DNA of 64,000 bases from Pecten maximus (GCF_902652985.1 NC_047016.1:52204001-52268000); one strand, 5' to 3'. Positions 8,495 to 62,745 are shown, numbered from the stretch's first letter. The notes: generated by a model not told the origin, from the sequence alone. Program-made: numbers and translations.

Positions 8495-8560
8495 ACGAAC
8501 TACCGACCCAGAGGTGACTACAGTGTCAGAACACCTTAACTTCGGCCACCGCCTTACCCC
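8495..8560 (-). mobile_element. tRNA-derived SINE head fragment
   Basis: Reverse strand gcggtggccgaagttaaggtg...ctctgggtcggtagttcg resembles the head of the full SINE at 35462. Confidence 0.6.
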
Positions 8561-8576
8561 CCCCCCCCCCCCCCCC

Positions 8577-8970
8577 CAACACGACACGACACAACACGAC
8601 ACGACACAACACGACACAACAGAGCACAACACGACACGCGACACAACACAACACAACACAACACAACACAATACGACACGACACGACACAACACAACACG
8701 ACACAACAGAGCACAACACAACACGACACAGCGCGACACAAAACAACACAACACAACACGGCACAACAGAGCACAACACGACACGCGACACAACACAACA
8801 CGACACAACACAACACAACTGAGCACAACATGACACGACACGACACAACACGACACGACATGACACAACACGACACGGCACGACACGACACAACACGGCA
8901 CGACACGACACAACACAACACGACACGACATGACACAACACGACACGGCACGACACGGCACGACACAACG
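8577..8970. repeat. Pentanucleotide microsatellite (CAACA/CGACA)n
   Basis: Direct inspection; explains the spurious VVSC/TTQH ORFs here. Confidence 0.95.
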
Positions 8971-10540
8971 CGAACGATTCCATGCAATCTATAGGAATAA
9001 ATGTCTCCTTCTTCGAAACAATAAGAATTAAGATCAAACGCAGCTATTCAGAAGATGAATTGAGTACAACGTGCTTCTCATACTGCTGTTTTTGTATGAA
9101 GGATAATAAATACATTATGACAAGCGGATAAATGACTCCAGTTTTATATGTCAAATGATGTGTAACAAAATACTGATACCTTTATCGGATTTATCAGCTT
9201 TTCTTTAGAAAATGTGATTTATTTTTTTTATTTTGAAGTGTCGTTTTCCACTATTTGTTTGGTATTTGTGTGTATTATATACCTGGCTTCTTTGCTATCT
9301 TACAAGGATACAAACAATTGGTGCTTTAAAATAAATATTACGAATGGAATATACAGATTGGACTTTTTTTCTTCATTTTTTTGGGAGGGATGGGGGTGTT
9401 GGTGTTGGTGAAAAACGTCATTTTGCAGATTCTTAGAACGTCTACACATGATTTTAACCAGTGTCTTCTTTTTTTATATGTATAACCGGAAGAAATCTCA
9501 AAATGAATGGGATAGTTTGAGATATTGTATACCTAATTATATGCCATAACGTGTCGGCCTTTTCATCCTCAGACATGCTGATAAATTGTTGTAGAACTGA
9601 TATGATGGTGCATATTATGTCGCTCAATCACAGAATTCCTCTTTATATTGAATCGTTCTAAAATCATTCTGATACAGAAATCTGAACGCAGCAACTGACA
9701 TTATATCTGCAAGAGTTGTGTCCCTTCTTTCAAAGTGCCAAGTACAGTGATCTGTATGAAGGAACATTCCAGTTCCGCCTGATCAAAATATAGAATAAAT
9801 CTGAATTGAAACAGATATATCTTTATAGACTTATGATGTCTGTCAATTTTCTGATTAATAGTAAGTGCGTTTCTTGTTACCGTTAATTACAAAATTGACA
9901 AAATTGGCCTTGTATAAAATAAAGTTGTCGTCCTAAAATTATCTAATACTATCTGACTGATATAATTATATATATATATTTACATTCTGTTTTGCATTTG
10001 CCTATATGTCGTTAGTAAACCAAATTGTATTCATGAGACTGTATACTACAATTTACAGTGATTCGGTCAGAGTAGGAATACAGCCCCAGGTGTTGCTGGT
10101 CAAAACAATGGCCGCCAGTTACTTTCGGCCTGGAGAGATTTCGAATGCTAGCATTTATTATCCACAACGCAAAAAAGAAAGCAACTTCACAAGTTATGAG
10201 AGTAATATTTTATGATTAAAACAAAATGTAGTCAACACAAAATAACTATAAGCGCCGTTCTTGATCTAAGAATGATCGAATTGTCAATGTCGTCACACTC
10301 ACAGGGGCTCGTTTCCGAATTGTCGTTAATGAGGGACTATATTAATCATTCTGGCAGTTTCGACTGTTCCGGTATTTGAACCTGATGACGTCAGTGATAG
10401 GGGAAGCGGCAAATTTAAACGCGTCTTAAGCTACAGTAAATAAAAAAAAATTATGAATGTAAATATAATAAATGTACTGATGCGTACTGGTCATGCGACC
10501 GGGAAACATGGACATTATACATCAGCAAAGAATAAATAAT

Positions 10541-12741
10541 CTATTTCTTTTTGATAGCAAGCATTGCAAAACTTTCGCTGGACGAGGATGGATTCCATTT
10601 TCCGCCTTCACTCACTACCGTTTGAGTGCATTTGACTATATCGAATCCACATTCTGTGTATATTTGACCGATGCTATTTTGAGATAGAGGGACACACTGG
10701 AATTTGAAGTGCCCTACATCATAATGTGGGATGTTGAAGGCACCCAGTACAATCAAATGACCACCAACTTTCAGCAAAGAAGCCACATTTTGTACGTTCT
10801 TATGGTACTCTTCCAAAGTCTGCGAAGCTGATTCTAAACATAGACTTGTCGTAATTACATCAAACTGGAGAGGATGGTTTCCATTCCCTAGAGGATTTCC
10901 AGATCTAACGTCAATTGGAAGAATTCCACGAATCTTTGTCTTCATCATTTGCTGTCTTTCTTCAATGGAATTTCTTAAATAGATAAATAAAGAAATAAAT
11001 ATTACCATATAATAAATAAGCATTACCACAAAAGAGATAAATGAATAAATTCATTAATTGTCATCACTTACATAAATATATGCATTAGCATTGATCAAGT
11101 AAATATTCAAGTAAGTATTACCATTAAATAGAAAGATATTGTCATTAAATTAATAGATAAAGAAACATGTACTAACATTTAATCAAAACATGAATAAATA
11201 AAAAAATAAAAAAAATATTACGATCAAGCAAAAATATGTATATAGAAATATTTAAGTAAATCTTACCATTAGATAAATATTACCATCAAGTTAATAAACG
11301 AACAAATATTATCATTTAATAGTTAAATGAAGAAATAAGCAAATACTGGCTTTGAATAAATAAATATATATTACAATAAAAAAAAAAAAAAAAAAATTCC
11401 AATCAAAAGAAAAAAAATAACCCAATCAAATAAAAGAGTAAATCAATAATTGCATTGAAAAATAAATAAATTAATAAAAAACTAATATTATATTTAAATA
11501 AATGAGTAGATAACTATTGAAAGTATAAATTTGATTCTACCATGTTTGCCTGTAACGCCAGTTTTGATTGGTTAAAAACCATGTATTATTTTCCAATAAC
11601 CCACGCTCGTGCCAATAATACACGCTCGTGAGTCACGGCTGTTACAATTTTAAATATCTAATATTCACCCGTTTCATAAAAGGTTACTATAGTCGAGTGG
11701 GCTAATGGGTTAGTCTTTCAATATATTTTTATCACGACGCGAGTTCGAATCCTACGGAGGCCCCCACTTTTTTTTTTTTTTTTTTATCCTTTTTTTTAAT
11801 TTTCAAAATCAATGCCATATGATAGATGCTCTTGATCGTAGTACTGTATTGCCTGTATATTTCATCAACAAATAATGCAATACTCAAGAAATAAATTACA
11901 AGGTTTTCCCAGGGTTTCTTTGCTGTTTTTCTATTAGAAAGAGGTCGATCTCAGAACTAAACAGTACATGGTAGAATAGAAATAATCAACTTTGACTCGT
12001 GTATTGTTGCAGGATATACAACTCGGACTCGGATAGTTTGCAATTTTAATTAATAACTCAGGCCTGTGGCCTTCGTTATTAATTTAATTGCAAAATATCC
12101 TCGTCCTCGTTGTATATCCTGCAATAATACACGAATCATCGTTAATTATTTCTTAAATATACTATGTAAATCATACGTATTCTAAAACGTACATGAACTT
12201 ATAACGATCATGGTAATTCCTTGTAGATATGGTTAACATTATTAGACGTACCTTGCATTCTCTTTCTTTAAGACATAGTCCGTTAATTCTTGTTCAGACG
12301 TTTGTTCACTTTTCCACCAATCATTCAAGAGGTCGCGACTTTGCTTATTGACGTCACTGAGATAGATATTATCAACGTGACCACATGAACTGAGTATGGT
12401 ACGGATGGTCGGCCCAGTCCCTACATCCAATAAGTTATGGCCCCTTACTGCACCTATTCAAATTTTAAAACAAATATGGTTAGATGGATGATTAACGATA
12501 AACAGTAGGACAGGTAGAAATACACAGGGCAATAGGAATGAGAGATATATTGCAATCAGTGTAATAAATCATCTTCTTTTTAATATACAAATGTACCTGA
12601 ATGAAAGATATCGTGAAGAGCGTCCACATTAAATAGAAGAATCTTCTTCTCTGCCTCGTCACCAAAAGAAAATCCGCGATCACCAATGTAGGCCTGGGGG
12701 TCAAAGTTATCATAGTCTGTAGTTTCGGTTAAAAACGACAT
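10541..12741 (-). CDS. NNMT/INMT/PNMT-family SAM-dependent N-methyltransferase, complete 3-exon gene
   Basis: Exons 12741-12597, 12453-12252 and 10973-10541 with canonical GT-AG and matching phases. Motifs FDPQAY, LLDVGTGP (SAM motif I), IYLSD, FDVITTSLCLESAS, LLKVGGHLIV and YDVG...F; three-exon layout as in vertebrate NNMT. Confidence 0.92.
11534..12157 (+). mobile_element. Palindromic non-autonomous element (Crypton-like architecture) in methyltransferase intron 2
   Basis: Short IR attctaccatgt (11534-11545) / acatggtagaat (11966-11977), immediately followed by a ~175-bp imperfect hairpin (11978-12153) with a ggcc-tgt-ggcc apex. Confidence 0.7.
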
Positions 12742-12807
12742 CCTGCTCGGGAAAATTACAAACACAGGTTAGGCCAGTATTCTTCCTGAAAATTGTGAAA
12801 CATGGTC

Positions 12808-12815
12808 TTTATATA
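12808..12815 (-). promoter_or_regulatory. Putative TATA box of the methyltransferase gene
   Basis: TATATAAA on the - strand about 70 nt upstream of the ATG at 12741. Confidence 0.5.
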
Positions 12816-13480
12816 CTGATGTGTGTATCATCATTTCATCTTCAATGGAGTCAAAAATAAAAACAACGATTGGCTGAAAAACCAATGAATATTTGATGTT
12901 TGCAATTCTTTGATCATTATTCAACAACAGAATGTTATACACATATATTTGCTTTGTTCTTTTCATTCTTACCCGGTACCTGTAATAAATGTTCACATTA
13001 GAATAATAGGCGCAGTCGTCAACTCATCATCAAAAAAGCCATGCCTATTTATTATGCTGACGGTGATTAAATACAAAAATATATACTTATTAGTGCAAGA
13101 TGTTACAATCACAGGTGGTCAGGTGGTAAAATTTAACCGATAAAATTCTAAATGCTAAAGTAGCATACTCACCACTTATCATCGGTGTTGTTTTAACTTT
13201 TGTGATATCTTCGCAAACATGCAGAGTTGCGAAAAGAATTTTCCGAAAGAGATTTAAGAACCGAAAGAAATAATTAAAAAAAAACACCCAACAACACTGC
13301 AACATAGCGAAGAGAAAGTATATCAAGGTTGCATTGACAACATGGACAGCCAATATCAGCCCTTTCATATGTGTAAACTTTAGTTATTTTACAACAGTTG
13401 CGACAAAAGGTGTGTAATTCTATATAAATCTCGATTGTGGACGACTCAGATTTCTGAGCGCGAGGGGGATTACTGTTAGA

Positions 13481-16400
13481 GATGGTGGTGGATGTTTACC
13501 TTACACTGCCCTCTGGTGATGGTGGCGGATGTTTACCTTACACTGCCCTGTTGTGATGGTGACGGATGTTTACCTTACACTGCCCTGTTGTGATGGCGGC
13601 GGATATTTTCCCTTACACTTTATTCTGGTGATGGTGGCGGATGTTTGACCTTACACTGCCCTCTGGTGATGCTGGCGGATGTTTACCTTACACTGCCCTG
13701 TTGTGATGGTGACGGATGTTTACCTTACACTGCCCTCTAGTGATGGCGACGGATGTTTTCCCTTCAACAACCGTCTGGTGATGCTAGCGGATGCTTTCTC
13801 TTACACTGCCTTCTAGTGATGGTGGCGGATGTTTACCTTACACTGCCCCCTGGTGATGGTGGCGGATGTTGACCTTACACTGCCCTCTGGTGATGGTGGC
13901 GGATGTTTACTTTACACTGCCCTCTGGTGATGGTGGCGGATCTTTACCTTACACTGCCCTCTGGTGATGGTGGCGGATGTTTACTTCACACTGCCCTCTG
14001 GTGATAGTGGCGGATGTTTATCTTACACTGCCCTCTGGTGATGGCGGCGGATGTTTATCTTACACTTCCCTCTGGTGATAGTGGCGGATGTTTATCTTAC
14101 ACTGCCCTCTGGTGATGGCGGCGGATCTTTACCTTACACTGCCCTCTGGTGATGGTGGCGGATGTTTTCTCTTACACTGCCCTCTGGTGATGGCGACGGA
14201 TGTTTTCCCTTACACTACCGTCTGGTGATGCTAGCGGATGTTTTCTCTTACACTGCCGTCTGGTGATGGTGGCGGATGTTTCTCTTACACTGCCCTCTGG
14301 TGATGGTGGCGGATGTTTACCTTACACTGCCCTCTGGTGATGGTGGCGGATGTTTTCTTTTACACTACCGTCTGGTGATGGTGGCGGATGTTTTCTCTTA
14401 CACTACCGTCTGGTGAAGCTGGCAGATGTTTTCTCTTACACTGCCCTCTGGTGATGGTGGCGGATGTTTACTTTACACTGCCCTCTGGTGATGGTGGCGG
14501 ATCTTTACCTTACACTGTGCTTTGATGATGGTGGCGGATGTTTAATCTTACACTATTATTTGGTTATGATGGCGGATGTTTTACCTTACACTGCCCTCTG
14601 GTGATGTTGGCGGATGTTTACCTTACACTGCCCTCTTGTGATAGTGGCGGATGTTTTTCCTTACACTGCCCTCTGAGTGATGGCAGCGGATGTTTACCTT
14701 ACACTGCCCTCTGGTGATGGCGGCGGATCTTTACCTTACACTGCCCTCTGGTGATGGCGGCGGATGTTCTACTTACACTGCCCTCTGGTGATGGCGTCTG
14801 ATCTTTACCTTACACTGCCCTCTGGTGATAGTGGCGGATGTTTTCCCTTACACTGCCCTCTGGTGATAGTGGCGGATGTTTTACCTTACACTGCCCTCTG
14901 GTGATGGCGGCGGATCTTTACCTTACACTGCCCTCTGGTGATAGTGGCGGATATTTTCCCTTACACTGCCCTCTGGTGATGGCGGCGGATGTTTACCTTA
15001 CACTGCCCTCTGGTGATAGTGGCGGATGTTTTCCCTTACACTGCCCTCTGGTGATAGTGGCGGATGTTTTACCTTACACTGCCCTCTGGTGATGGCGGCG
15101 GATCTTTACCTTACACTGCCCTCTGGTGATAGTGGCGGATGTTTTACCTTACACTGCCCTCTGGTGATAGTGGCGGATATTTTCCTTTACACTGCCCTCT
15201 AGTGATGGTGACGGATGTTTTACCTTACACTCCTCTCTGGTGAAGGTGGCGGATATTTTATATTACACTGCCCTCTGGTGATAGTGGCGGATGTTTTCCT
15301 TACACTGCCCTCTGGTGATAGTGGCGGATGTTTTACCTTACACTGTCATGTGGTGATGGTGACGGATGTTTGACCTTACACTGCCCTCTGGTGATGGTGA
15401 CGGATGTTTTCCTTTACACTGCCCTCTGGTGATGGTGGCGGATGTTTTCCTTTACACTGCCTCTGATGATGGCAGCGGATCGTTACCTTACACTGCCCTC
15501 TGGTGATAGTGGCGGATGTTTTCCTTACACTGCCCTCTGGTGATAGTGGCGGATGTTTTACCTTACACTGCCCTCTGTTGATGGCGGCGGATCTTTACCT
15601 TACACTGCCCTCTAGTGATGGTGACGGATGTTTATCTCACACTGTCCTCTGGTGAATGTGGCGGATATTTATATTACACTGCCCTCTGGTGATAGTGGCG
15701 GATGTTTTACCTTACACTGCTCTCTGGTGATGGTGGCGGATGTTTGACCTTACACTGCCCTCTGGTGATGGTGGCGGATGTTTGATCTTACACTGCCCTG
15801 TTGTGATGGTGACGGATGTTTACCTTACACTGCCCTCTGCTGATGCTGGCGGATGTTTACCTTACACTGCCCTGCTGTGATGGTGACGGATGTTTACCTT
15901 ACACTGCCCTCTGGTGATGGTGACGGATGTTTACCTTACACTGCCCTGTTGTGATGGTGGCGGATGTTTGACCTTACACTGCCCTCTGGTGATGCTGGCG
16001 GATGTTTACCTTACACTGCCCTCTAGTGATGGCCACGGATGTTTTCCCTTCAACAATTGTCTGGTGATGCTAGCGGATGTTTTCTCTTACACTGCCCTCT
16101 AGTGATGGTGGCGGATGTTTACCTTACACTGCCCTCTGGTGATGGTGGCGGATGTTTACTTTACACTGTCCTCTGGTGATGGCGGCGGATCTTTACCTTA
16201 CACTGCCCTCTGGTGATAGTGGCGGATGTTTTACCTTACACTGCCCTCTGGTAATGGCGGCGGATCTTTACCTTACACTGCCCTCTGGTGATAGTGGCTG
16301 ATGTTTTACCTTACACTGCCCTCTGGTGATAGTGGCGAATGTTTTCCTTACACTGCCTTCTAGTGATGGTGACGGATGATTACCTTACACTGCCCTCTGG

Positions 16401-19400
16401 TGATGGTGGCGGATGTTTTCCTTTACACTGCTCTCTGATTATGGTGACGGATGTTTGACCTTACACTGCCCTCTGGTGATGGTGGCGGATGTTTGACCTT
16501 ACCCTGCCCTCTGGTGATGGCGGCGGATCTTTACCTTACACTTTCCTCTGGTGATGGTGACGGATGTTTGACCTTACACTGCCTTCTAGTGATGGTGACG
16601 GATGATTACCTTACACTGCCCTCTGGTGATGGTGGCGGATGTTTTCCCTTACACTGCTCTCTGATGATGTTGACGGATGTTTGACCTTACACTGCCCTCT
16701 GGTGATGGTGGCGGATGTTTGATCTTACACTGCCCTGTTGTGATGGTGACGGATGTTTACCTTACACTGCCCTCTGCTGATGCTGGCGGATGTTTACCTT
16801 ACACTGCCCTGCTGTGATGGTGACGGATGTTTACCTTACACTGCCCTCTGGTGATGGTGACGGATGTTTACCTTACACTGCCCTGTTGTGATGGTGGCGG
16901 ATGTTTGACCTTACACTGCCCTCTGGTGATGCTGGCGGATGTTTACCTTACACTGCCCTGTTGTGATGGTGACGGATGTTTACCTTACACTGCCCTCTAG
17001 TGATGGCCACGGATGTTTTCCCTTCAACAATTGTCTGGTGATGCTAGCGGATGTTTTCTCTTACACTGCCCTCTAGTGATGGTGGCGGATGTTTACCTTA
17101 CACTGCCCCCTGGTGATGGTGGCGGATGTTTGACCTTACACTGCCCTCTGGTGATGGTGGCGGATGTTTACTTTACACTGTCCTCTGGTGATGGCGGCGG
17201 ATCTTTACCTTACACTGCCCTCTGGTGATAGTGGCGGATCTTTACCTTACACTGCCCTCTGGTGATGGCGGCGGATGTTTACTTTACACTGCCCTCTGGT
17301 GATGGCGGCGGATCTTTACCTTACACTGCCCTCTGGCGATAGTGGCGGATCTTTACCTTACACTGCCCTCTGGTGATGGCGGCGGATCTTTACCTTACAC
17401 TGCCCTCTGGTGATGGTGGCGAATGTTTTCCCTTAGGCTGTCCTCTGGTGATGGTGGCGGTTTTTTTTACGTTACACTGTGCCTTGATGATGGTGGCGGA
17501 TGTTTTATCTTACACTATTATTTGGTTATTGTGGCGGATGTTTACCTTACACTGCCCTCTGATGATGGCGGCGGATCTTTACCTTACACTGCCCTCTGGT
17601 GATAGTGGCGGATGTTTTACCTTACACTGCCCTCTGGTGATAGTGGCGAATGTTTTCCTTACACTGCCTTCTAGTGATGGTGACGGATGATTACCTTACA
17701 CTGCCCTCTGGTGATGGTGGTGGATGTTTTCCCTTACACTGCTCTCTGATTATGGTGACGGATGTTTGACCTTACACTGCCCTCTGGTGATGGTGGCGGA
17801 TCTTTACCTTACACTGCCCTCTGATGATGGTGGCGGATGTTTACTTTACACTGCCCTCTGGTGATGGCGGCGGACCTTTACCTTACACTGCCCTCTGGTG
17901 ATAGTGGCGGATCTTTACCTTACACTGCCCTCTGGTGATGGCGGCGGATCTTTACCTTACACTGCCCTCTGGTGATGGTGGCGGATGTTTTCCCTAAGGC
18001 TGTCCTCTGGTGATGGTGGCGGTTTTTTTACGTTACACTGTGCTTTGATGATGGTAGCGGATGTTTTATCTTACACTATTATTTGGTTATGGTGGCGGAT
18101 CTTTACCTTACACTGCCCTCTGATGATGGCGGCGGATCTTTACCTTACACTGCCCTCTGGTGATGGCGGCGGATCTTTACCTTACACTGCCCTCTGGTGA
18201 TGGCGGTTGATGTTTACCTTACACTGCCCTCTGGTGATGGCGGCGGATCTTTACCTTACACTGCCCTCTGGTGATGGCGGCGGATGTTCTACTTACACTG
18301 CCCTCTGGTGATGGCGTCTGATCTTTACGTTACACTGCCCTCTGGAAATATTGGCGGATATTTTCCCTTACACTGCCCTCTGGTGATAGTGGCGGATGTT
18401 TTACCTTACACTGCCCTCTGGTGATGGCGGCGGATCTTTACCTTACACTGCCCTCTGGTGATAGTGGCGGATATTTTCCCTTACACTGCCCTCTGGTGAT
18501 GGCGGCGGATGTTTACCTTACACTGCCCTCTGGTGATAGTGGCGGATGTATTCCCTTACACTGCCCTCTGGTGATAGTGGCGGATGTTTTACCTTACACT
18601 GCCCTCTGGTAATGGCGGCGGATCTTTACCTTACACTGCCCTCTGGTGATAGTGGCTGATGTTTTACCTTACACTGCCCTCTGGTGATAGTGGCGAATGT
18701 TTTCCTTACACTGCCTTCTAGTGATGGTGACGGATGATTACCTTACACTGCCCTCTGGTGATGGTGGCGGATGTTTTCCTTTACACTGCTCTCTGATTAT
18801 GGTGACGGATGTTTGACCTTACACTGCCCTCTGGTGATGGTGGCGGATGTTTGACCTTACCCTGCCCTCTGGTGATGGCGGCGGATCTTTACCTTACACT
18901 TTCCTCTGGTGATGGTGACGGATGTTTGACCTTACACTGCCTTCTAGTGATGGTGACGGATGATTACCTTACACTGCCCTCTGATGATGGTGGCGGATGT
19001 TTTCCCTTACACTGCTCTCTGATGATGTTGACGGATGTTTGACCTTACACTGCCCTCTGGTGATGGTGGCGGATGTTTGATCTTACACTGCCCTGTTGTG
19101 ATGGTGACGGATGTTTACCTTACACTGCCCTCTGCTGATGCTGGCGGATGTTTACCTTACACTGCCCTGCTGTGATGGTGACGGATGTTTACCTTACACT
19201 GCCCTCTGGTGATGGTGACGGATGTTTACCTTACACTGCCCTGTTGTGATGGTGGCGGATGTTTGACCTTACACTGCCCTCTGGTGATGCTGGCGGATGT
19301 TTACCTTACACTGCCCTGTTGTGATGGTGACGGATGTTTACCTTACACTGCCCTCTAGTGATGGCCACGGATGTTTTCCCTTCAACAATTGTCTGGTGAT

Positions 19401-22400
19401 GCTAGCGGATGTTTTCTCTTACACTGCCCTCTAGTGATGGTGGCGGATGTTTACCTTACACTGCCCCCTGGTGATGGTGGCGGATGTTTGACCTTACACT
19501 GCCCTCTGGTGATGGCGGCGGATGTTTACTTTACACTGCCCTCTGGTGATGGCGGCGGATCTTTACCTTACACTGCCCTCTGGTGATAGTGGCGGATCTT
19601 TACCTTACACTGCCCTCTGGTGATGGCGGCGGATCTTTACCTTACACTGCCCTCTGGTGATGGTGGCGAATGTTTTCCCTTAGGCTGTCCTCTGGTGATG
19701 GTGGCGGTTTTTTTACGTTACACTGTGCCTTGATGATGGTGGCGGATATTTTATCTTACACTATTATTTGGTTATTGTGGCGGATGTTTACCTTACACTG
19801 CCCTCTGATGATGGCGGCGGATCTTTACCTTACACTGCCCTCTGGTGATAGTGGCGGATGTTTTACCTTACACTGCCCTCTGGTGATAGTGGCGAATGTT
19901 TTCCTTACACTGCCTTCTAGTGATGGTGACGGATGATTACCTTACACTGCCCTCTGGTGATGGTGGCGGATGTTTTCCCTTACACTGCTCTCTGATTATG
20001 GTGACGGATGTTTGACCTTACACTGCCCTCTGGTGATGGTGGCGGATGTTTGACCTTACCCTGCCCTCTGGTGATGGCGGCGGATCTTTACCTTACACTT
20101 TCCTCTGGTGATGGTGACGGATGTTTGACCTTACACTGCCTTCTAGTGATGGTGACGGATGATTACCTTACACTGCTCTCTGATGATGTTGACGGATGTT
20201 TTCCCTTACACTGCTCTCTGATGATGTTGACGGATGTTTGACCTTACACTGCCCTCTGGTGATGGTGGCGGATGTTTGACCTTACACTGCCCTGTTGTGA
20301 TGGTGACGGATGTTTACCTTACACTGCCCTCTGGTGATGCTGGCGGATGTTTACCTTACACTGCCCTGTTGTGATGGTGACGGATGTTTACCTTACACTG
20401 CCCTCTGGTGATGGTGACGGATGTTTACCATACACTGCCCTGTTGTGATGGTGGCGGATGTTTGACCTTACACTGCCCTCTGGTGATGCTGGCGGATGTT
20501 TACCTTACACTGCCCTGTTGTGATGGTGACGGATGTTTACCTTACACTGCCCTCTAGTGATGGCGACGGATGTTTTCCCTTCAACAACCGTCTGGTGATG
20601 CTAGCGGATGCTTTCTCTTACACTGCCCTCTAGTGATGGTGGCGGATGTTTACCTTACACTGCCCCCTGGTGATGGTGGCGGATGTTTGACCTTACACTG
20701 CCCTCTGGTGATGGTGGCGGATGTTTACTTTACACTGTCCTCTGGTGATGGTGGCGGATCTTTACCTAACACTGCCCTCTGGTGATAGTGGCGGATCTTT
20801 ACCTTACACTGCCCTCTGGGGATGGCGGCGGATGTTTACTTTACACTGCCCTCTGGTGATGGCGGCGGATCTTTACCTTACACTGCCCTCTGGTGATAGT
20901 GGCGGATCTTTACCTTACACTGCCCTCTGGTGATGGCGGCGGATCTTTACCTTACACTGCCCTCTGGTGATGGTGGCGAATGTTTTCCCTAAGGCTGTCC
21001 TCTGGTGATGGTGGCGGTTTTTTTACGTTACACTGTGCCTTGATGATGGTGGCGGATGTTTTATCTTACACTATTATTTGGTTATGGTGGCGGATGTTTA
21101 CCTTACACTGCCCTCTGATGATGGCGGCGGATCTTTACCTTACACTGCCCTCTGGTGATCGCGGTTGATCTTTACCTTACACTGCCCTCTGGTGATGGCG
21201 GCGGATCTTTACCTTACACTGCCCTCTGGTGATGGCGGCGGATGTTCTACTTACACTGCCCTCTGGTGATGGCGGCTAATCTTTACCTTACACTGCCCTC
21301 TGGAAATATTGGCGGATATTTTCCCTTACACTGCCCTCTGGTGATAGTGGCGGAGGTTTTACCTTACACTGCCCTCTGGTGATGGCGGCGGATATTTTCC
21401 CTTACACTGCCCTCTGGTGATGGCAACGGATGTTTAACTTACACTGCCCTCTGGTGATAGTGGCGGATGTATTCCCTTACACTGCCCTCTGGTGATGGCG
21501 GCGGATGTTTTACCTTACACTGCCCTCTGGTAATGGCGGCGGATCTTTACCTTACACTGCCCTCTGGTGATAGTGGCGGATATTTTACCTTACACTACCC
21601 TCTGGTGATAGTGGCGAATGTTTTCCTTACACTGCCTTCTAGTGATGGTGACGGATGATTACCTTACACTGCCCTCTGGTGATGGTGGCGGATGTTTTCC
21701 CTTACACTGCTCTCTGATGATGGTGACGGATGTTTGACCTTACACTGCCCTCTGGTGATGGTGGCGGATGTTTGACCTTACCCTGCCCTCTGGTGATGGC
21801 GGCGGATCTTTACCTTACACTTTCCTCTGGTGATGGTGACGGTTGTTTGACCTTACACTGCCGTCTGGTGATTGTGGCGAATGTTTTCCCTTACAAAGCC
21901 CTCTGGTGATTGTGGCGGATGTTTACCTTACACTGCCCTCTGGTGATAGTGGCGGATGTTTTCCCTTACACTGCCCTCTGGTGATGGTGGCGGAGGTTTA
22001 CCTTACACTGCCCTCTGGTGATGGTGGCGGATGTTTTCCCTTACACTGCCCTCTGGTGATGGTGGCGGATGTTTTCTCTTACACTGCCCTCTGGTGATGG
22101 TGGCGGATGTTTTCTCTTACAATGCCCTCTGGTGATGTTGGCGGATGTTTTCTCTTACACTGCGCCGTGGTGATGGCGGCGGATGTTTACCTTACACTTC
22201 CCTCTGGTGATGGTGGCGGATGTTTGACCTTATACTGCCCTCTGATGATGGCGGCGGATGTTTACCTTACACTGCCCTCTGGTGATGGTGTCGTATATTT
22301 TCCCTTACACTTTATTCTGGTGATGGTGGCGGATGTTTTCTCTGACTCTGCCCTTTGGTGATGGTAGCGGATGTTTTCTCTTACACTGCCCTCTGGTGAT

Positions 22401-22860
22401 GTTGGCGGATGTTTTCCTTACACTGCCCTCTAGTGATGGTGACGGATGATTACCTTACACTGCCCTCTGGTGATGGTGGCGGATGTTTGACCTTACACTG
22501 CTCTCTGATGATGGTGACGGATGTTTGACCTTACACTGCCCTGTTGTGATGGTGACGGATGTTTACCTTACACTGCCCTCTAGTGATGGCGACGGATGTT
22601 TTCCCTTCAACTACCGTCTGGTGATGCTAGCGGATGCTTTCTCTTACACTGCCCTCTAGTGATGGTGGCGGATGCTTACCTTACACTGCCCCCTGGTGAT
22701 GGCGGCGGATGTTTACCTTACACTGCCCTCTGATGATGGCGGCGGATGTTTACCTTACACTGCCCTCTGATGATGGCGGCGGATGTTTACCTTACACTGC
22801 CCTCTGGTGATGGTGGCGCATATTTTCCTTTACACTGCCTCCTGATTATTGTGGATGTGG
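13481..22860. repeat. 9.4-kb minisatellite array, 37-38 bp unit, about 250 copies, with higher-order structure
   Basis: Consensus ttacactgccctctggtgatggtggcggatgtttacc; copy number estimated from length divided by unit size; diagnostic variants recur at offsets of 1199 and 2358 bp. Confidence 0.98.
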
Positions 22861-24057
22861 TCTATACTTTACACGCAAATAATTCAAAATAACTTATGAT
22901 TCTAGATAGTGCCACCACTTTAAAGTTATTATGTATGTTGACAAGCAAACAGGGGTTTTATTTCTTTCTCGCATGTAGACACGCTTCCTGGAATACATAT
23001 ATACATCTACATTTGTATAGTGTATAGTTCAGTACGAGTCATGTGTTATACAAAAACAGCAAGAGAAAATATCACATACCCTTTCCTATTCATTAATATT
23101 GTTCTACTATTATTCAAATAGCCACACAGTGGTGTTTATATCTAAATTGGCTAGGTTGCAAATCCCAGATAAACCTTTATTTGTTTGGCCATGAAAACTC
23201 GATAGAACAAGAAATTACCACGTATGTATGATACCGTAAATTGAGAATAGGAGGGTACTATAAATATTTACACAGGCACACCTGAGAATGTCCAAGGTTA
23301 ATGGGACCAGGTGTCTCAAAAGAGTTAGCGTTTTCTGCTGTAGAGAAAGCAATCGCTTTGAAAACCGATGTCAAAGCCAGGAAATATTTCGTAGTCGCTA
23401 TATGTCCTTAGGAACATTTCATGTCTGATTTTTGAGTATAGTTTAAAGAATTCGTATTGCTGGAATGTAAAATATGACTGGGACGTCCCAATTCATTTGG
23501 TGTTTTTCCCTGCACATATCAACAAAGGCTTGGTTTATAGCACAATACCAGGATGTACATCACAGTACCCTGGGTAAATATGCAAAATAAATAAAACAAA
23601 TAAATGTATAAATACAATATAAAAAAATAAAATAAAAAGCAAAAAACGAAATATATATATATAAAAAAAATAAAAGGAAAGCAAATGATTGGTTGAGAAT
23701 ATATAACTTTATTTGATTAGACCATATCTTCACAAGTTCCGCTGACTTAACCTCCAAATAAGGGATACGGATCAGTTATTAGGTTTCACTTAACGTCATT
23801 AAACAACTGTACGAGTTACATCAGTGAGTATGTACAATGTACTTCAAATAATGTATATAGTTAAAGGATGAGTAGGCAGTGAAAATCTGTATCATAAGGA
23901 ATTTTCGTCAGTGGTGCTAGTGCTAGGGTACATTAGGAATGTAGTTTGGGGAATGTATCCAACTTGTCAATAAAAAGGAAGAAGTCACTTGTTAATCCAA
24001 TTTGAAATCCAAAAATGAAAACCATGGAAGTTGTTAAATCATAAGGCTATCGCACAA

Positions 24058-35668: not shown

Positions 35669-35732
35669 TATAATTTCAACCGGTTAACGGTAGGAATTAG
35701 GATGTAATTATTTTCTCTTCGGTATGAGGTAC

Positions 35733-36145
35733 GCCAATAGGTGGCGTTACTGGTATTTGCACGTGCAAATCGGGTAAGGTATAGCCTATACGTGTCATTC
35801 AGGCGACACAGGTATACCAGATCACACGTAAATTTTAAACTTTTAAGGGTAATTTTCATATGTTGTATTATAATACAGTATAGGTTAGGTTAGGGTAGGA
35901 GTTGTGTGTGTGAAATATGTTATTTCGTAATACATGTATTGTTATTTGACAATAAAGTAGTCAGTGCCTATGTCGCTGGGAAATACACTTCATCAGTTAG
36001 TCAGTGCCTATGTCGCTGGGAAATACCAACACTCATCAGTTAGTCAGTGCCTATGTTGCTGGGAAATACCAACACTCATCAGTTAGTCAGTGCCTATGTC
36101 GCTGGGAAATACAACTTTTGTGTTTGTGTTCTTTATCCTATTGGA
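35733..36145. mobile_element. Non-autonomous element with internal 40-43 bp tandem repeats and a (ggtta)n tract
   Basis: Terminal IR ccaatagg/cctattgg; four copies of agtcagtgcctatgtcgctgggaaatac (35958-36113); taggttaggttagggtagg; palindrome atttgcacgtgcaaat. Confidence 0.5.
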
Positions 36146-39185: not shown

Positions 39186-39875
39186 CCATGGGTAACGGGA
39201 CTGTTATTCCCTTGGATAACGGGATTCTTACTCCTGGGGATAACGGGATTCTTACTCCTGGGGATAACGGGATTCTTACTCCTGGGGATAACGGGATACT
39301 TACTCCTGGGGATAACGGGATTCTTACTCCTGGGGATAACGGGATTCTCATTCCTGGGGATAACGGGATTCTTACTCCTGTGGTAACGGGATTCTTACTC
39401 CTGGGGATAACGGGATACTTATTCCCTTGGGTAACGGGATTATTATTCCTGGGGATAACGGGATTCTCATTCCTGGGGATAACGGGATTCTTATTCCCTT
39501 GGGTAACGGGATTCTTATTCCTGTGGTAATGGGATTCTTATTCCAATGGATTATGGGAGTGGCCACGGTGGCCCAGCGGCTAAGGTGTCCCGACACTTTA
39601 TCTGTAGCCCTCCACCTCTGGGTTGCGAGTTCGAAACCTACGTGGGGCAGTTGCCAGGTAATGACCGTAAGCCGTTGGTTTTTCTTCGAGTTAATCCGGC
39701 TTTCCTCTACCTCAAAAACCTCGCAGGTCCTTAAATGACCCTGGCTGTTAATAGGACGTTAAACAAAACATCCCAAACAAATGGTCGCGGGATTCTTATT
39801 CCTATGGGTAACGGGATTCTTATTCCTATGGGTAACGGGATTCCTATGGCTATGGGTAACGGGATTCTTATTTCC
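39186..39875. repeat. 24-bp VNTR interrupted by a V-SINE (39556-39780)
   Basis: Unit (c)ctggggataacgggattcttact / catgggtaacgggattcttattcc; SINE is the same family as 35462. Confidence 0.9.
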
Positions 39876-40240
39876 ATTGTTTACGTATTCTACTGCAAGG
39901 GGACCCCGCCTCTAAATGACCATGGCTGATCACAGGGCGATAAACCTATCAAACAAACAAAACCTAGCGACACGCTCCCCATAAGACGCTTTTCCTTCCG
40001 AAACACAAGGTTTTAACATCGTACTTTTAAGGTTCAATCTCCCGTGGTAATCTTACATGCCGACACTATTTCACTTTCTTTCGAGAGTTAGGGTTATTAT
40101 TTCAATTTGTTGGACGTCTGTATTATACAAATAATTATATACGGTGTTCGTGAAAAAATCCATAATATTTGACACGAGGTAATATTAATCGACCTATTTT
40201 CTATTGCACAAGGCCGACGGTATATTTTTTTTATAAGGCA

Positions 40241-40645
40241 GATGTCAGTAAGTTTGGTAGTGAGGTGAGGGTGTCATACCGAAGTCAAATGTCAGTAAGT
40301 TTGGAAGTGAGGTGCCAATATGTGTCATACCGAAGTCAAATGTCAGTAAGTTTGGTAGTGAGGTGTCAATCTGTTTCATATCGAAGACAAATTTCAGTCA
40401 GTTTAGTAGTAAGGTGGGAGTATCCTACCGAAGTCAAATATCAATACGTGTAGCAGTGAGGTGACAATCAATGTCATATCGAAGTCAAATCTCAGTAAGT
40501 TTTGTATTATGTGACAATCAGTGTCATACCGAAGGTAAATGTCAGTTAGTTGGTAATGAGGTGGCAGAGTCATACCGAAGTAAAATACCAGCAAGTTTTG
40601 TAGTGAGGTGACAATAAATGTCCTACCGAAGGCAAATGTCTGTAC
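40241..40645. repeat. 48-51 bp minisatellite downstream of FReD-2
   Basis: gtcagtaagtttggtagtgaggtgtcaatatgtgtcataccgaagtcaaat units. Confidence 0.88.
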
Positions 40646-40984
40646 GTTAAATTGAAGACATCATACATTATTAGTACCAAGGATGATCCTCTTTATTTTT
40701 TTTTTTTTTTTGTTTAATTAATAGCACTATGAACAGTCAGAGCCGTACTGACGCGATATATCCTTGTAGTGGCTACACCATTTTTAACTACATTGTGGAA
40801 GTCACCAGCTACATGTATTTCAAGATGCTTCTGTAATATTAACCGTACGTCATATTACAATATATAAGGCATGTCTAGCACTTCCAAGACGTTATCGATA
40901 TTAAAAGTTAATAGACTGTCCCTGCTGATGTGTGTGTTTGATTACAATCTTAGCTGTATCAAACAGCAAAGAAATAATCGGTAT

Positions 40985-48545: not shown

Positions 48546-48995
48546 CCATGGGTAACGGGACTGTTATTACTTTGGGTAACGGGATACTTACTCCTGGGGA
48601 TAACGGGATTCTTATTCCCTTGGGTAACGGGATTCTTATTCCTGTGGTAATGGGATTCTTATTCCAATGGATTATGGGAGTGGCCGCGGTGGCCCAGCGG
48701 CTAAGGTGTCCCGACACTTTATCTCTAGCCCTCCACCTCTGGGTTGCGAGTTCGAAACCTACGTGGGGCAGTTGCCAGGTAATGACCGTAAGCCGTTGGT
48801 TTTTCTTCGAGTTTATCCGGCTTTCCTCTACCTCAAAAACCTCGAACGTCCTTAAGTGACCCTGGCTGTTAATAGGATGGTAAACAAAACATCCCAAACA
48901 AATGGTTGCGGGATTCTTATTCCTATGGGTAACGGGATTCCTATGGCTATGGGTAACGGGATTCCTATGGCTATGGGTAACGGGATTCTTATTTC
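48546..48995. repeat. 24-bp VNTR with V-SINE insertion (48675-48900), ~350 bp upstream of the FReD-2 MMHL exon
   Basis: Paralog of the 39186 array with fewer units. Confidence 0.9.
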
Positions 48996-61370: not shown

Positions 61371-61722
61371 GTATCTTCTCTCACAAAGTGTATTGCCTAA
61401 TGTTCCAATTGGAATACTTCGCTTTAGATGAGATAGGACGATGCTTATTATAGTGTGTACTGCAGTTATGACACAACTTATGTGTAACCCTGGTTGGATG
61501 TTAAATATGGAAGAACACATGGAGCGACGGTAATAAAGGTTTGTTTCGTTAATTATTAGTGAGGCATATTGCCATGTTGTACTTTAAAGGCTTAACTGTT
61601 AACAAAACACATGTATACTTTATACCATACATTTTCATCCAAAGATATTTGGCTCACTTATTCATTCCTATTATCACATTTTGCACTGAATATCATTTTT
61701 CCTATTTCATAAAAGCTTATTA

Positions 61723-62745
61723 CCATGGATAATGGGATTCTAATTCGCAAGGGTAACGGGATTTTGATTCCCATAGGTAACGGGATTCTTATTCCCTTGG
61801 GTAACGGGATTCTTATTCCCATGGGTAACGGGATTCTTATTCCCTTGGGTAACGGGATTATTATGGCTATGGGTATCGGGATTCTTATTCCCATGGGTAA
61901 CGGGATTCTTAATCCAATAGGTAACTGGATTCTTGTGGCAATAGGGAAACGGGATTCTTATTCCCATGGGTAACGGGTTTCTTATTCCAATGGGTAACGA
62001 GATTCTTATTCCCATGGGTAACGGGGTTCTTATGGTTATGCGTATCGGGATTATTATTCTAATGGGTAACGGGATTCTTATTCCCATGGGTAAGGAGATT
62101 CTTATTCCCATGGGTAACGGGGTTCTTATGGTTATGGGTATCGGGATTATTATTCTAATGGGTATGGGGATTCTTAATCTTATTGGTTACGGGGTTCTTA
62201 TTCCCATGGGTAACGGGATTCTTAATCTTATGGGTAACGGGGTTATTATTCCCGTTGGTAACGGGATTCCTAATCTTATTGTTTACGGGGTTCTTATTCC
62301 CATGGGTAACGGGATTCTTAATCTTATGGGTAACGGGTTTCTTATTCCCATGGGTAACGGGATTCCTAATTTTATTGGTTACGGGGTTCCTATTCCCATG
62401 GGTAACGGGATTCCTAATCTTATTGGTTACGGGGTTCTTATTCCCATGGGTAACGGGATTCCTAATCGTATTGGTTACGGGGTTCTTATTCCCATGGGTA
62501 ACGGGATTCTTAATCTTATGGATAACGGGGTTCTTATTCCCATGGGTAACGGGATTCCTAATCTTATTGTTTACGGGGTTCCTATTCCCATGGGTAACGG
62601 GATTCCTAATCTTATTGGGTACGTGGTTCTTATTCCTGTGGTTAATGGGATTCCCAATCTTATTGTTAACGGGGTTCTTATTCCCATGGGTAACGATATT
62701 ATTATTCCCATGGGTAACGGGATTATTATTCCCATGGGTAATGAC
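61723..62745. repeat. Expanded 24-bp VNTR (~42 units) ~350 bp upstream of FReD-3 exon 1
   Basis: catgggtaacgggattcttattcc units, partly alternating as a 48-bp dimer; no SINE insertion. Confidence 0.93.

What the first reader, a model, noticed from the sequence alone, without database searches (positions are those of the whole stretch)
13481..22860. 9.4-kb minisatellite that reads as a co-oriented array of up to ~250 CTCF motifs (candidate super-insulator or loop anchor)
Seen: the reverse complement of the consensus unit contains tCACCAGAGGGCAGTG. Established: the CTCF core consensus is CCASYAGRKGGCRS, so only the first, less constrained, position differs; CTCF is conserved across most bilaterians. 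Several recurrent variants (CACTAGAGGGCAG, CACCAGGGGGCAG, CAGCAGAGGGCAG) stay within the consensus, although others (ctgttgtg, ctctgatg) break it. All motifs face left, toward the methyltransferase promoter ~0.7 kb away, and the array separates two metabolic genes from the immune FReD cluster. Inference: it may act as a copy-number-tunable insulator or superloop anchor, analogous to mammalian DXZ4/FIRRE; I know of no such description in molluscs.
Basis: partly seen in the sequence, partly recalled or inferred. Interest (0 to 1): 0.82.

Follow-up and report, generated by a model that had tools for sequence, protein, structure and literature searches.

The report
Scallop minisatellite of CTCF-like sites
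A 9.4-kb tandem repeat upstream of a king-scallop methyltransferase gene carries about 150-195 same-direction copies of the binding motif of the genome-folding protein CTCF. It evolves like ordinary junk repeat, so it is a good test locus, not a shown insulator.

Summary
Window 13481-22846 of Pecten maximus chromosome C2 holds about 250 head-to-tail units of 37/38 bp. The unit occurs nowhere else in the 918-Mb genome. On the minus strand, 146 units read NCASYAGRKGGCRS, a 13/14 match to the CTCF consensus, and 183 pass a CTCF matrix at p<1e-5.

The motif is probably meaningful in this genome:
- The strict consensus occurs 639 times, against 31-111 for reversed or rotated controls.
- Thirty sampled single sites have unrelated flanks.
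- Those sites prefer T/C at the unconstrained next base, as vertebrate CTCF sites do.
- About 21 other loci carry tandemly repeated perfect consensus sites with unrelated spacers. Five control motifs give about one such locus in all.

No sign of selection was found inside this array:
- Motif columns vary as much as spacer columns.
- Substitutions do not spare the motif.
- 22% of units have lost the motif.

The genome holds roughly 260,000 minisatellites, so a few chance matches are expected. No RNA contigs cover the array.

The most likely reading is a neutral VNTR amplified from a CTCF-type site. It may bind CTCF, but an insulator role is unproven. The scan's first readers had already flagged five other CTCF-like arrays in this genome.

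The parts
13481..22846 (-). Minisatellite of 250 units of 37/38 bp (plus-strand consensus begins GATGGTGGCGGATG). The CTCF-like core TCACCAGAGGGCAGT reads on the minus strand, pointing toward lower coordinates.
   Evidence: TRF; unit segmentation and column table; motif counts; found at this locus only in the genome.
22847..22880 (.). Degenerate terminal partial unit that fades into unique right flank. It lacks the CTCF-like core.
   Evidence: Sequence; segmentation. The right flank 22847-23580 is unique in the genome.
13373..13481 (-). 5'-truncated copy (3' tail plus about 100 bp) of a roughly 245-bp tRNA-derived SINE. It directly abuts the left edge of the array. Its AT-rich tail supplies the TATA-like and CCAAT-like strings seen on the plus strand there.
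   Evidence: At least 14 other genomic copies all start at the same base with unrelated upstream DNA. The consensus has A and B boxes. Alignment ends at the array edge, and the unit is no more SINE-like than its shuffles.
16215..17263 (.). Internal 1,049-bp block (28 units) duplicated at 18573-19621, with 26 of 28 units identical. This shows growth by multi-unit unequal exchange.
   Evidence: Unit-level diagonal search; lag peaks at 32, 63 and 95 units.
18573..19621 (.). Second copy of the 1,049-bp internal block.
10544..12741 (-). INMT/NNMT-family methyltransferase gene. CDS exons are 12741-12595, 12454-12251 and 10975-10544. It is the gene the motifs point toward.
   Evidence: Pfam PF01234; 100% identity to an NCBI Pecten maximus protein; tblastn exon map.
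12780..12880 (-). Probable core promoter of the methyltransferase gene: CCAAT near 12872, TATATAAA at about 12808-12815, and the ATG about 70 nt further on. It lies about 0.7 kb from the array, so the array is upstream and intergenic, not intronic.
   Evidence: Read directly from the sequence. The transcription start is inferred; no RNA contigs cover the gene.

Best explanation
**What it is.** A single-locus, intergenic minisatellite (VNTR) of the king scallop. It has about 250 copies of a 37/38-bp unit. It lies 0.7 kb upstream of the TATA/CCAAT promoter of an INMT-like methyltransferase gene and is flush against a 5'-truncated SINE.

**How it grew.** By slippage or unequal exchange, including recent kilobase-sized block duplications (shown).

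**The motif.** Each intact unit carries TCACCAGAGGGCAGT on the minus strand, a 13/14 match to the CTCF consensus (shown). The canonical consensus is several-fold over-represented in this genome at unrelated unique sites, with the expected pyrimidine after the core. Scallop CTCF therefore very probably recognises this kind of sequence (inferred). Roughly 150-195 units are then potential CTCF sites, all pointing toward the methyltransferase gene.

**Most likely origin.** The array began as a tandem amplification of one CTCF-type site. At least 21 other loci in this minisatellite-rich genome show the same thing on a smaller scale.

**Current state.** It is drifting neutrally. Motif columns change as fast as spacer columns, and 22% of units have lost the motif (shown). 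If the chromatin is open it would act as a dense CTCF landing pad, but as a by-product, not as a selected insulator (inferred).
For: **Array anatomy and uniqueness:**

**Growth:** block duplications.

**Motif quality:**. The consensus is confirmed from the literature.

**The consensus is in use in this genome:**
- 639 hits against 62 for the reversed control.
- 111 and 31 hits for the rotated control and its reverse.
- Markov expectation of 56-161.
- About 390 independent loci.
- 30 sampled singletons share no flanks. The base after the core is T in 18 of 30 and T/C in 23 of 30.

**Tandem amplification of the consensus:**
- 89 adjacent pairs in about 21 loci, against 0, 0, 0, 0 and 7 pairs for five control motifs.
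- Those arrays have unrelated spacers, and T/C follows the core in 20 of 21.

**Neutral evolution:**

**Minisatellite load:** about one array per 3.3 kb.

**Presence in a second individual:**

**CTCF in molluscs and oyster:** PMC10658182, PMC7021899.
Against: - No binding, accessibility, methylation or Hi-C data were available, so CTCF occupancy is inferred from sequence alone.
- The unit has T, not C, at the first consensus position. Not one unit matches the strict 14-mer.
- The scoring matrix was recalled from memory.
- I did not verify the CTCF gene in this genome.
- With about 2.6e5 minisatellites, a handful of chance matches at this score are expected. This array alone is therefore not significant genome-wide.
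- Lack of per-unit constraint does not exclude function in a 250-fold redundant array.
- Concerted evolution makes variant counts non-independent.
- No single-copy progenitor site was found.
- Orthologous loci in other scallops could not be fetched.
Confidence: 0.5

Rival explanations
1. Selected architectural element: the array is kept because many co-oriented CTCF sites form a strong, copy-number-tunable insulator or loop anchor between the FReD genes and the methyltransferase promoter.
For: - High-quality motif in 150-195 units.
- The canonical CTCF consensus is enriched and recurrently amplified in tandem in this genome.
- In about 20 other arrays the core is somewhat less variable than the spacer (15 of 20, Wilcoxon p=0.02).
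- Position between the 3' side of the FReD genes and a promoter.
- Present in a second individual.
- A CCCTC-like motif is enriched at squid TAD borders (PMC9023564).
Against: - No motif-specific constraint in this array. 22% of units are broken and substitutions are not motif-sparing.
- The weak signal in other arrays is biased, because they were selected for perfect copies. It vanishes for arrays of 8 or more units (p=0.16).
- A 37-bp spacing is close to the length of DNA that one full CTCF would cover (my own knowledge). Adjacent sites may therefore compete.
- Loop extrusion is undemonstrated in spiralians (PMC10658181).
- No functional data of any kind.
Confidence: 0.2
2. Pure look-alike: an ordinary GC-rich minisatellite whose unit resembles the CTCF consensus by chance and is not bound by CTCF in the animal.
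For: - About 2.6e5 minisatellites in the genome times 2e-5 to 2e-4 per unit gives a few to tens of chance matches.
- The first consensus position is T and there is no strict match.
- Neutral pattern of variation.
- The first readers scanned many windows for many motifs, so there is a look-elsewhere effect.
Against: - The match is 13/14 at the consensus positions, with the correct T after the core.
- Composition-matched control motifs almost never form arrays, while the CTCF consensus does at about 21 loci. CTCF-type arrays as a class are therefore not chance.
- The core has no CpG, so methylation would not block binding (sequence).
Confidence: 0.25
3. Splice-site-seeded or transcribed repeat: like the 'mirage' minisatellites reported elsewhere in this genome, the unit (minus strand ...CAGTGTAAGGTAAAC...) copies an exon-end or splice-donor junction. 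Alternatively, the array is a non-coding RNA or coding repeat.
For: - Donor-like GTAAG strings occur in every unit on the strand of the neighbouring gene (sequence).
- Earlier follow-ups of this scan report donor-seeded arrays as common in this genome.
- 37+38 = 75 nt is divisible by three, and plus-strand ORFs of up to 105 aa exist.
Against: - The gene's CCAAT/TATA promoter lies between the array and the ATG, so the array is not in its intron.
- No exon lies at either edge. The left edge is a SINE and the right flank is unique non-coding DNA.
- No RNA contigs on the array in three RNA runs (weak evidence, because these are contigs only).
- No ORF exceeds 105 aa.
- No Rfam match.
- Folding is no better than shuffles.
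Confidence: 0.04

Closest known systems
Mammalian CTCF-bound tandem repeats (DXZ4, FIRRE, ICCE; mouse Dxz4)
   Same: A tandem array in which every unit carries a CTCF site in one orientation. Array size varies. The proposed role is as an architectural anchor (PMC3491370).
   Different: - Units there are 3-6 kb, GC- and CpG-rich, transcribed, and bound allele-specifically on the inactive X.
- Here the unit is 37 bp, has one or two CpGs with none in the core, shows no RNA contigs and sits on an autosome-like chromosome of a mollusc.
- Binding and long-range contacts are undemonstrated.
Gypsy insulator of Drosophila (12 clustered Su(Hw) zinc-finger sites)
   Same: Many closely spaced same-direction sites for an insulator zinc-finger protein packed at tens-of-bp spacing. 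This works as a strong enhancer blocker (my own knowledge).
   Different: - It has twelve sites inside a retrotransposon, a different protein and proven function.
- Here there are about 150-195 sites, the unit is not TE-derived and function is unknown.
Ordinary hypervariable minisatellites / VNTRs, including the very abundant minisatellites of this scallop genome
   Same: - A 10-100-bp unit at a single locus, more GC-rich than its surroundings (51% against about 35%).
- Internal variant units and block duplications, with degenerate edges.
- The genome carries about one minisatellite per 3.3 kb.
   Different: - Unusually long (9.4 kb, 250 units). Other CTCF-type arrays seen here have 2-25 units.
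- The unit carries a near-consensus site for a known architectural protein.
Repeat-borne CTCF site expansions (e.g. SINE B2 in rodents)
   Same: Repetitive DNA multiplies CTCF motifs beyond what selection placed (my own knowledge).
   Different: - There the spread is dispersed, by transposition.
- Here it is local, by tandem duplication.
- The adjacent SINE does not carry the motif, and 30 single sites are not TE copies.

Membership tests
CTCF core binding motif (consensus CCASYAGRKGGCRS) | Exact match to the 14-bp degenerate consensus | tested here: not met
   0 of 250 units match strictly. Position 1 is T. 146 units match positions 2-14. The consensus wording was verified in PMC6746451.
CTCF core binding matrix match (human CTCF matrix) | High score against the human CTCF matrix, on one strand only | tested here: met
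   The consensus unit scores 19.5 of 31.9 bits (p=1.4e-7). 183 units reach p<1e-5, all on the minus strand. The matrix was recalled from memory, so the numbers are approximate.
CTCF site in this organism | The organism uses the canonical motif: enrichment over controls, plus the extended-motif preference at a position not used in the search | tested here: met
   - 639 hits against 62, 111 and 31 for controls, and a Markov expectation of 56-161.
- T/C after the core in 23 of 30 singletons and 20 of 21 arrays.
- Flanks unrelated.
CTCF site in this organism | The genome encodes CTCF with conserved zinc fingers 3-7 | not tested
   No CTCF query sequence was available from a tool, and I did not type one from memory. 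From the literature: CTCF orthologues in molluscs (PMC10658182) and oyster CTCF cloned (PMC7021899).
CTCF site in this organism | Protein occupancy in vitro or in vivo | not testable with these tools
   No ChIP, CUT&RUN, DAP-seq or ATAC data could be reached.
CTCF-bound tandem repeat (DXZ4/FIRRE type) | Every unit of a tandem array carries a CTCF site in one orientation | tested here: met
   78% of units reach p<1e-4, all on the minus strand.
CTCF-bound tandem repeat (DXZ4/FIRRE type) | Kilobase-scale, transcribed unit with its own promoter | tested here: not met
   The unit is 37/38 bp. No RNA contigs lie on the array in three RNA runs.
CTCF-bound tandem repeat (DXZ4/FIRRE type) | Long-range contacts or a boundary in Hi-C | not testable with these tools
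   No Hi-C of this species could be laid. The single reads call was used on the left junction.
Minisatellite / VNTR | Head-to-tail units of 10-100 bp at a single locus, with variant units | tested here: met
   There are 123 unit types among the 250 units.
Minisatellite / VNTR | Copy number differs between individuals | tested here: inconclusive
   A contig from another individual joins 13569 to 13832, 7 units shorter. Short-read contigs collapse repeats, so this cannot be trusted.
Selected transcription-factor-site array | Motif positions less variable than the spacer, with substitutions that spare the motif | tested here: not met
   - Variation 6.9% against 7.9% (p=0.82).
- Variant types present 26/42 against 33/54 (p=1.0).
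- Count-weighted mean score change of -4.0 bits, against -3.5 bits for all possible changes.
Splice-junction-seeded minisatellite ('mirage') | The array abuts an exon end and the unit copies the exon/intron junction | tested here: not met
   The promoter lies between the array and the gene. The edges are a SINE and unique DNA. No RNA contigs cover the region.
Transposon-derived satellite | The unit is homologous to a dispersed element, or is present at other loci | tested here: not met
   The unit is found only here. Its alignment to the adjacent SINE is no better than shuffles (42% of shuffles score at least as high).

The most novel reading that the evidence does not exclude
The king-scallop genome uses tandemly amplified CTCF sites as a class of architectural elements. 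There are at least 21 loci with perfect consensus arrays and tens more with relaxed ones. This 9.4-kb, roughly 170-site array is the extreme member: a protostome counterpart of DXZ4/FIRRE or of the gypsy insulator, acting as a one-sided loop-extrusion barrier upstream of the methyltransferase gene. A weaker novel variant: CTCF-occupied sites are themselves mutational hot spots for tandem duplication in this genome.
Probability: 0.15. Interest if true: 0.8.

Novelty: new member of a known kind. Interest (0 to 1): 0.5.

Why it matters
Whether CTCF-dependent loop extrusion operates outside vertebrates, and in spiralians in particular, is an open question (PMC10658181, PMC10658182). The only mollusc evidence so far is a motif enrichment at squid domain borders.

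This work adds sequence-level evidence that the canonical CTCF consensus is in use in a bivalve: several-fold excess, unrelated contexts and the correct extended base. It also shows that such sites are repeatedly amplified in tandem.

A natural 9.4-kb block of about 170 same-direction sites next to a simple TATA promoter is an unusually strong test locus. One ChIP or CUT&RUN experiment and one Hi-C map would show whether mollusc CTCF binds the vertebrate-type motif and whether it stops cohesin directionally.

If nothing binds, the array is one more example of how a minisatellite-rich genome produces convincing-looking 'regulatory' arrays by accident. That is a useful caution for the rest of this scan.

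Tried and rejected
- **Coding repeat: rejected.** No ORF exceeds 105 aa, none of 60 aa or more lies on the minus strand, and the mix of 37- and 38-nt units breaks the frame.
- **Structured or known RNA: rejected.** No Rfam match at E<=1. DNA folding z-scores are about 0.3.
- **Plus-strand promoter firing into the array (TATATAAA at about 13422, CCAAT at about 13350): rejected.** Both strings belong to the AT-rich tail of a SINE shared with at least 14 other copies.
- **Unit derived from that SINE: rejected**.
- **Array inside a larger transposon: rejected.** The right flank is unique and the two flanks share no repeats.
- **Genomic excess of the consensus explained by one dispersed repeat: rejected** for the 30 sites sampled. 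Two arrays (L026, L029) do look related beyond the core.
- **RNA evidence: none obtained.** The RNA runs that 'held' part of the stretch did so only through two high-copy inserted elements. They give no coverage of the gene or the array.
- **A random 800-kb genome sample for a cleaner null: not done.** Minisatellite density and Markov models therefore rest on about 150-217 kb, part of it near CTCF sites.
- **CTCF gene of this genome: not searched.** No tool-given query existed.
- **ARAGORN:** it does not call the SINE head as a tRNA.
- **Pfam:** it found nothing in 28 other ORFs of the window.

Full report
**1. What is there**

The window is G000:C2:52204001-52268000 of a 918-Mb, 3,983-contig genome. 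The neighbouring gene product is 100% identical to an NCBI protein of Pecten maximus, the king scallop.

TRF reports one array at 13481-22839 with period 37 (equally 75), 249.8 copies and 85% matches. A wrap-around alignment to the consensus unit splits it into 250 units ending at 22846: 136 of 37 nt, 112 of 38 nt and 2 of 39 nt. A degenerate partial unit follows and fades into unique DNA.

The array is 51% G+C in a roughly 35% G+C neighbourhood. It contains 123 distinct unit types. It also contains recent multi-unit duplications: for example, 16215-17263 and 18573-19621 are 1,049 bp each with 26 of 28 units identical. It therefore grew by unequal exchange of blocks as well as of single units.

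The unit exists only at this locus. A 226-nt probe hits only the array. A 36-nt pattern with up to 3 mismatches gives 120 forward and 0 reverse matches, and every listed match lies inside the array.

Contigs of an independent individual (run X5) carry the left junction and units, so the array is not an assembly artefact of one sample.

**2. The motif**

Counts on the minus strand of the array:
- TCACCAGAGGGCAGTG occurs 120 times.
- 146 units match positions 2-14 of the consensus.
- No unit matches position 1, which is T.
- The plus strand has no match.

I scored the window with the JASPAR MA0139.1 counts as I recall them (not fetched; treat the numbers as approximate), against a 36% G+C background. 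The results:
- The consensus unit scores 19.5 of 31.9 bits (p=1.4e-7).
- 147 units reach p<1e-6, 183 reach p<1e-5, 195 reach p<1e-4 and 55 fall below that.
- The remaining 54.6 kb of the window holds a single p<1e-5 hit, at 35731 on the plus strand.

Co-orientation is automatic for a tandem repeat.

**3. Is the match more than chance?**

For this array alone, only marginally.
- Shuffles of the unit reach 19.5 bits in 2.2e-4 of trials. Shuffles of typical AT-rich local minisatellite units did so in 0 of 39,000 trials.
- The genome is saturated with minisatellites. There are 20 arrays in this 64-kb window and about 22 non-selected arrays in 84.5 kb of other loci. That is about one per 3.3 kb, or about 2.6e5 genome-wide.
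- A few to tens of chance matches are therefore expected somewhere in the genome.

**4. Is the CTCF consensus meaningful in this genome?**

The evidence here is much stronger.

*Abundance.* The strict 14-mer occurs 639 times (365 forward, 274 reverse), against 62 for the same pattern read backwards. A rotated version that keeps the two half-sites gives 111, and its reverse gives 31. Markov models of order 0-4, trained on 217 kb, give expectations of 56-161. After collapsing arrays, chromosomes C1-C3 hold 71 loci, which scales to about 390 loci genome-wide. That is a 3.5- to 12-fold excess.

*Independence of the sites.* Thirty singleton sites fetched with flanks share nothing but the motif. The excess is therefore not one dispersed repeat.

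*An independent check.* The base after the core was not part of the search pattern. It is T in 18 of 30 sites and T/C in 23 of 30, which is the preference of vertebrate CTCF sites. GC at positions 13-14, which creates a CpG, is used in 16 of the first 40 listed sites despite the AT-rich genome (my count).

*Literature.* CTCF orthologues are reported in molluscs, and a CTCF motif is the most abundant motif in open chromatin of an annelid (PMC10658182). Oyster CTCF has been cloned, and the DNA-binding fingers are the conserved part of the protein (PMC7021899). [quoted passage not shown]

I did not verify the CTCF gene in this genome.

**5. A class of arrays**

I required two strict consensus sites 15-45 bp apart. 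This gives 89 pairs in about 21 loci on 13 chromosomes plus an unplaced scaffold (C3419), against 0 pairs for the reversed control. Two rotated controls and their reverses give 0, 0, 0 and 7 pairs.

I fetched 20 of these loci. They are small minisatellites, with period 30-57, 2-25 units and 70-1,000 bp. Their spacers are mutually unrelated, and T/C follows the core in 20 of 21 including this array.

A relaxed pattern (VCANNAGRNGGCRSY pairs, which excludes this array) gives 797 pairs against 72 for its control. A few large arrays dominate the pair counts, and some of those arrays look more like YY1 sites.

How surprising is the class? About 5% of CTCF-consensus loci are tandem arrays. Random seeding would predict about 1%, because unit sequences of all arrays add up to about 9 Mb of 918 Mb. 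Control motifs give about 0-1 array in roughly 300 loci. CTCF-type sites are therefore amplified, or retained as arrays, a few-fold more often than expected. Part of the class is also explained simply by many sites multiplied by a genome that duplicates everything.

The array studied here is by far the largest seen. The next largest are at least 3.5 kb on scaffold C3419 and 3.6 kb at C3:20464212. The scan's first readers had independently flagged five other CTCF-like arrays in this genome, which agrees with this count.

**6. Is the motif under selection inside this array?**

No sign of it.
- Mean non-consensus frequency is 6.9% in the 14 core columns, 6.25% in the eight columns with at least 1 bit of information, and 7.9% in the 18 non-motif columns (Mann-Whitney p=0.82 and p=1.0).
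- Within the motif, variability does not fall with information content (Spearman rho=-0.16, p=0.52).
- Observed substitutions cost on average 4.0 bits, against 3.5 bits for all possible substitutions. They are not motif-sparing.
- Variant types are equally present: 26/42 in the core against 33/54 outside it (Fisher p=1.0).
- Counting each distinct unit once gives 8.5% against 9.2% (p=0.92).
- In three duplicated blocks, every second unit has lost the motif (map).

Two caveats apply. Units are not independent, because of concerted evolution. And a 250-fold redundant array may tolerate loss of single sites.

In the other arrays the core is slightly less variable than the spacer (15 of 20, p=0.02). 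Those arrays were selected for perfect copies, and the effect is not significant for arrays of 8 or more units.

**7. Surroundings**

*Left side.* An NNMT/PNMT/TEMT-family gene (Pfam PF01234; named INMT-like by NCBI) lies on the minus strand. Its CDS exons are 12741-12595, 12454-12251 and 10975-10544. Upstream of its ATG the minus strand reads CCAAT (about 12872) and TATATAAA (about 12808-12815). The promoter is therefore about 0.7 kb from the array, and the array is intergenic, not intronic.

*Between the promoter and the array.* A 5'-truncated tRNA-derived SINE lies at 13373-13481. Its homology to at least 14 other copies ends exactly where the array starts. The unit itself is not SINE-derived.

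*Right side.* The flank is unique. FReD-type exons (FTTKDRDHD...WWY.SC) lie on the minus strand at about 41.2 kb and 50.4 kb.

*Order on the minus strand.* FReD genes, then 16-18 kb of DNA, then the array, the SINE, the promoter and the methyltransferase. The motifs point toward the methyltransferase.

*RNA.* No RNA contigs from three RNA runs lie on the array or on the methyltransferase exons. The only RNA and high-depth signal comes from two inserted high-copy elements (about 9970-10467 and 11530-12152) that are absent from individual X5.

**8. Verdict**

The thing itself is a real, single-locus, very large VNTR. Its units are near-consensus CTCF sites in a genome that evidently uses the canonical CTCF motif.

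The best-supported history is tandem amplification of one CTCF-type site in a genome prone to such amplification, followed by neutral drift. Probable but unproven CTCF binding would then be a by-product (confidence 0.5).

A selected insulator or loop anchor remains possible (0.2) but has no positive evidence. A pure look-alike that nothing binds remains possible as well (0.25). Splice-site-seeded, coding or RNA readings are essentially excluded (0.04).

In kind it is a minisatellite. In possible working it is closest to the DXZ4/FIRRE macrosatellites and the gypsy Su(Hw) array, but the features that define those (occupancy, contacts, kilobase-scale transcribed units) were either untestable or not met.

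No description of CTCF-motif tandem arrays in bivalves was found in the searchable library.

- The scoring matrix was recalled from memory.
- Only assembled contigs, not raw reads, were available for the runs laid.

Noticed in passing
window 13373-13481 (minus strand); other copies L044-L054: A roughly 245-bp tRNA-derived SINE family. The consensus has A and B boxes and an AT-rich tail ending ...AAATAAAGTTTAC. The copy here is 5'-truncated exactly at the array edge. ARAGORN does not call the head as a tRNA.
   Followed up: yes
window 9970-10467 and about 11530-12152: Two high-copy inserted elements flank or lie within introns of the methyltransferase gene. Both are absent from the contig of another individual (X5 joins 9969 to 10468 and about 11363 to 12153), so they are insertion polymorphisms. 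They caused the spurious 'RNA holders' in the run search.
   Followed up: partly
G000 C3:6109711, C3:15002374, C3:35929357, C4:39596617, C4:44541339, C6:14886443, C6:22310745, C6:33955121/33993429, C7:41673208, C8:7242620, C8:32881906, C10:25605404, C10:28647602, C11:9486237, C11:26284104, C13:21882546, C14:15933147, C14:38026600, C17:7936556, C18:23507909, C19:15460006, C3419:8694-12247: About 21 independent minisatellites (period 30-57) whose units each carry a perfect CTCF consensus, with unrelated spacers. Composition-matched control motifs form almost none.
   Followed up: partly
G000 C3419:8694-12247 versus C14:15933147-15933234 (L039): The same 37-bp CTCF-consensus unit forms only about 6 copies on chromosome C14 but at least 3.5 kb on an unplaced scaffold. 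This may be an alternative haplotype with a greatly expanded array.
   Followed up: no
window array, plus strand; genome-wide hits of the rotated control: 48 units read ATGGCGGC (44 read GATGGCGGCGG), which is the YY1 core. The rotated control pattern's genomic hits are dominated by AGATGGCGGCCAC, also YY1-like. Several kb-scale arrays have 32-bp units with ACACAAGRTGGCRST (C3:20464212-20467830, C4:5073769-5074879). YY1-type motifs may be another amplified class.
   Followed up: no
L026 (C4:39596617) and L029 (C6:22310745): The units of these two CTCF-type arrays resemble each other beyond the core (TCACCA.TAGGTGGC.CTG.AT..GACAT), so some arrays may share a source. An earlier first-reader note mentions a CTCF-like/E-box cassette in terminal repeats of tyrosine-recombinase retroelements.
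   Followed up: no
window 8557-8970: A run of 18 C followed by about 400 bp of (CACGA/CACAA)n pentanucleotide repeat. It explains the strong composition skew of that kilobase.
   Followed up: no
window 39193-39544, 39788-39872, 48549-48665, 48909-48992, 61716-62741: One 24-bp minisatellite family (unit about CGGGATTCTTATTCCTATGGGTAA) recurs five times around the FReD genes, with up to 43 copies. Further arrays lie at 54981-56166 (28 bp x 42) and 40235-40648 (51 bp x 8).
   Followed up: no
window 35731-35749 (plus strand): The only other CTCF-matrix hit at p<1e-5 in the window (CGCCAATAGGTGGCGTTAC, 15.3 bits). It is oriented away from the array.
   Followed up: no
L075 (G000 C2:3498387, minus strand): A single-copy strict CTCF site whose core and next five bases (CACCAGAGGGCAGTGTAA) are identical to the array unit over 18 nt. 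It lies 49 Mb away on the same chromosome. This is probably coincidence.
   Followed up: partly
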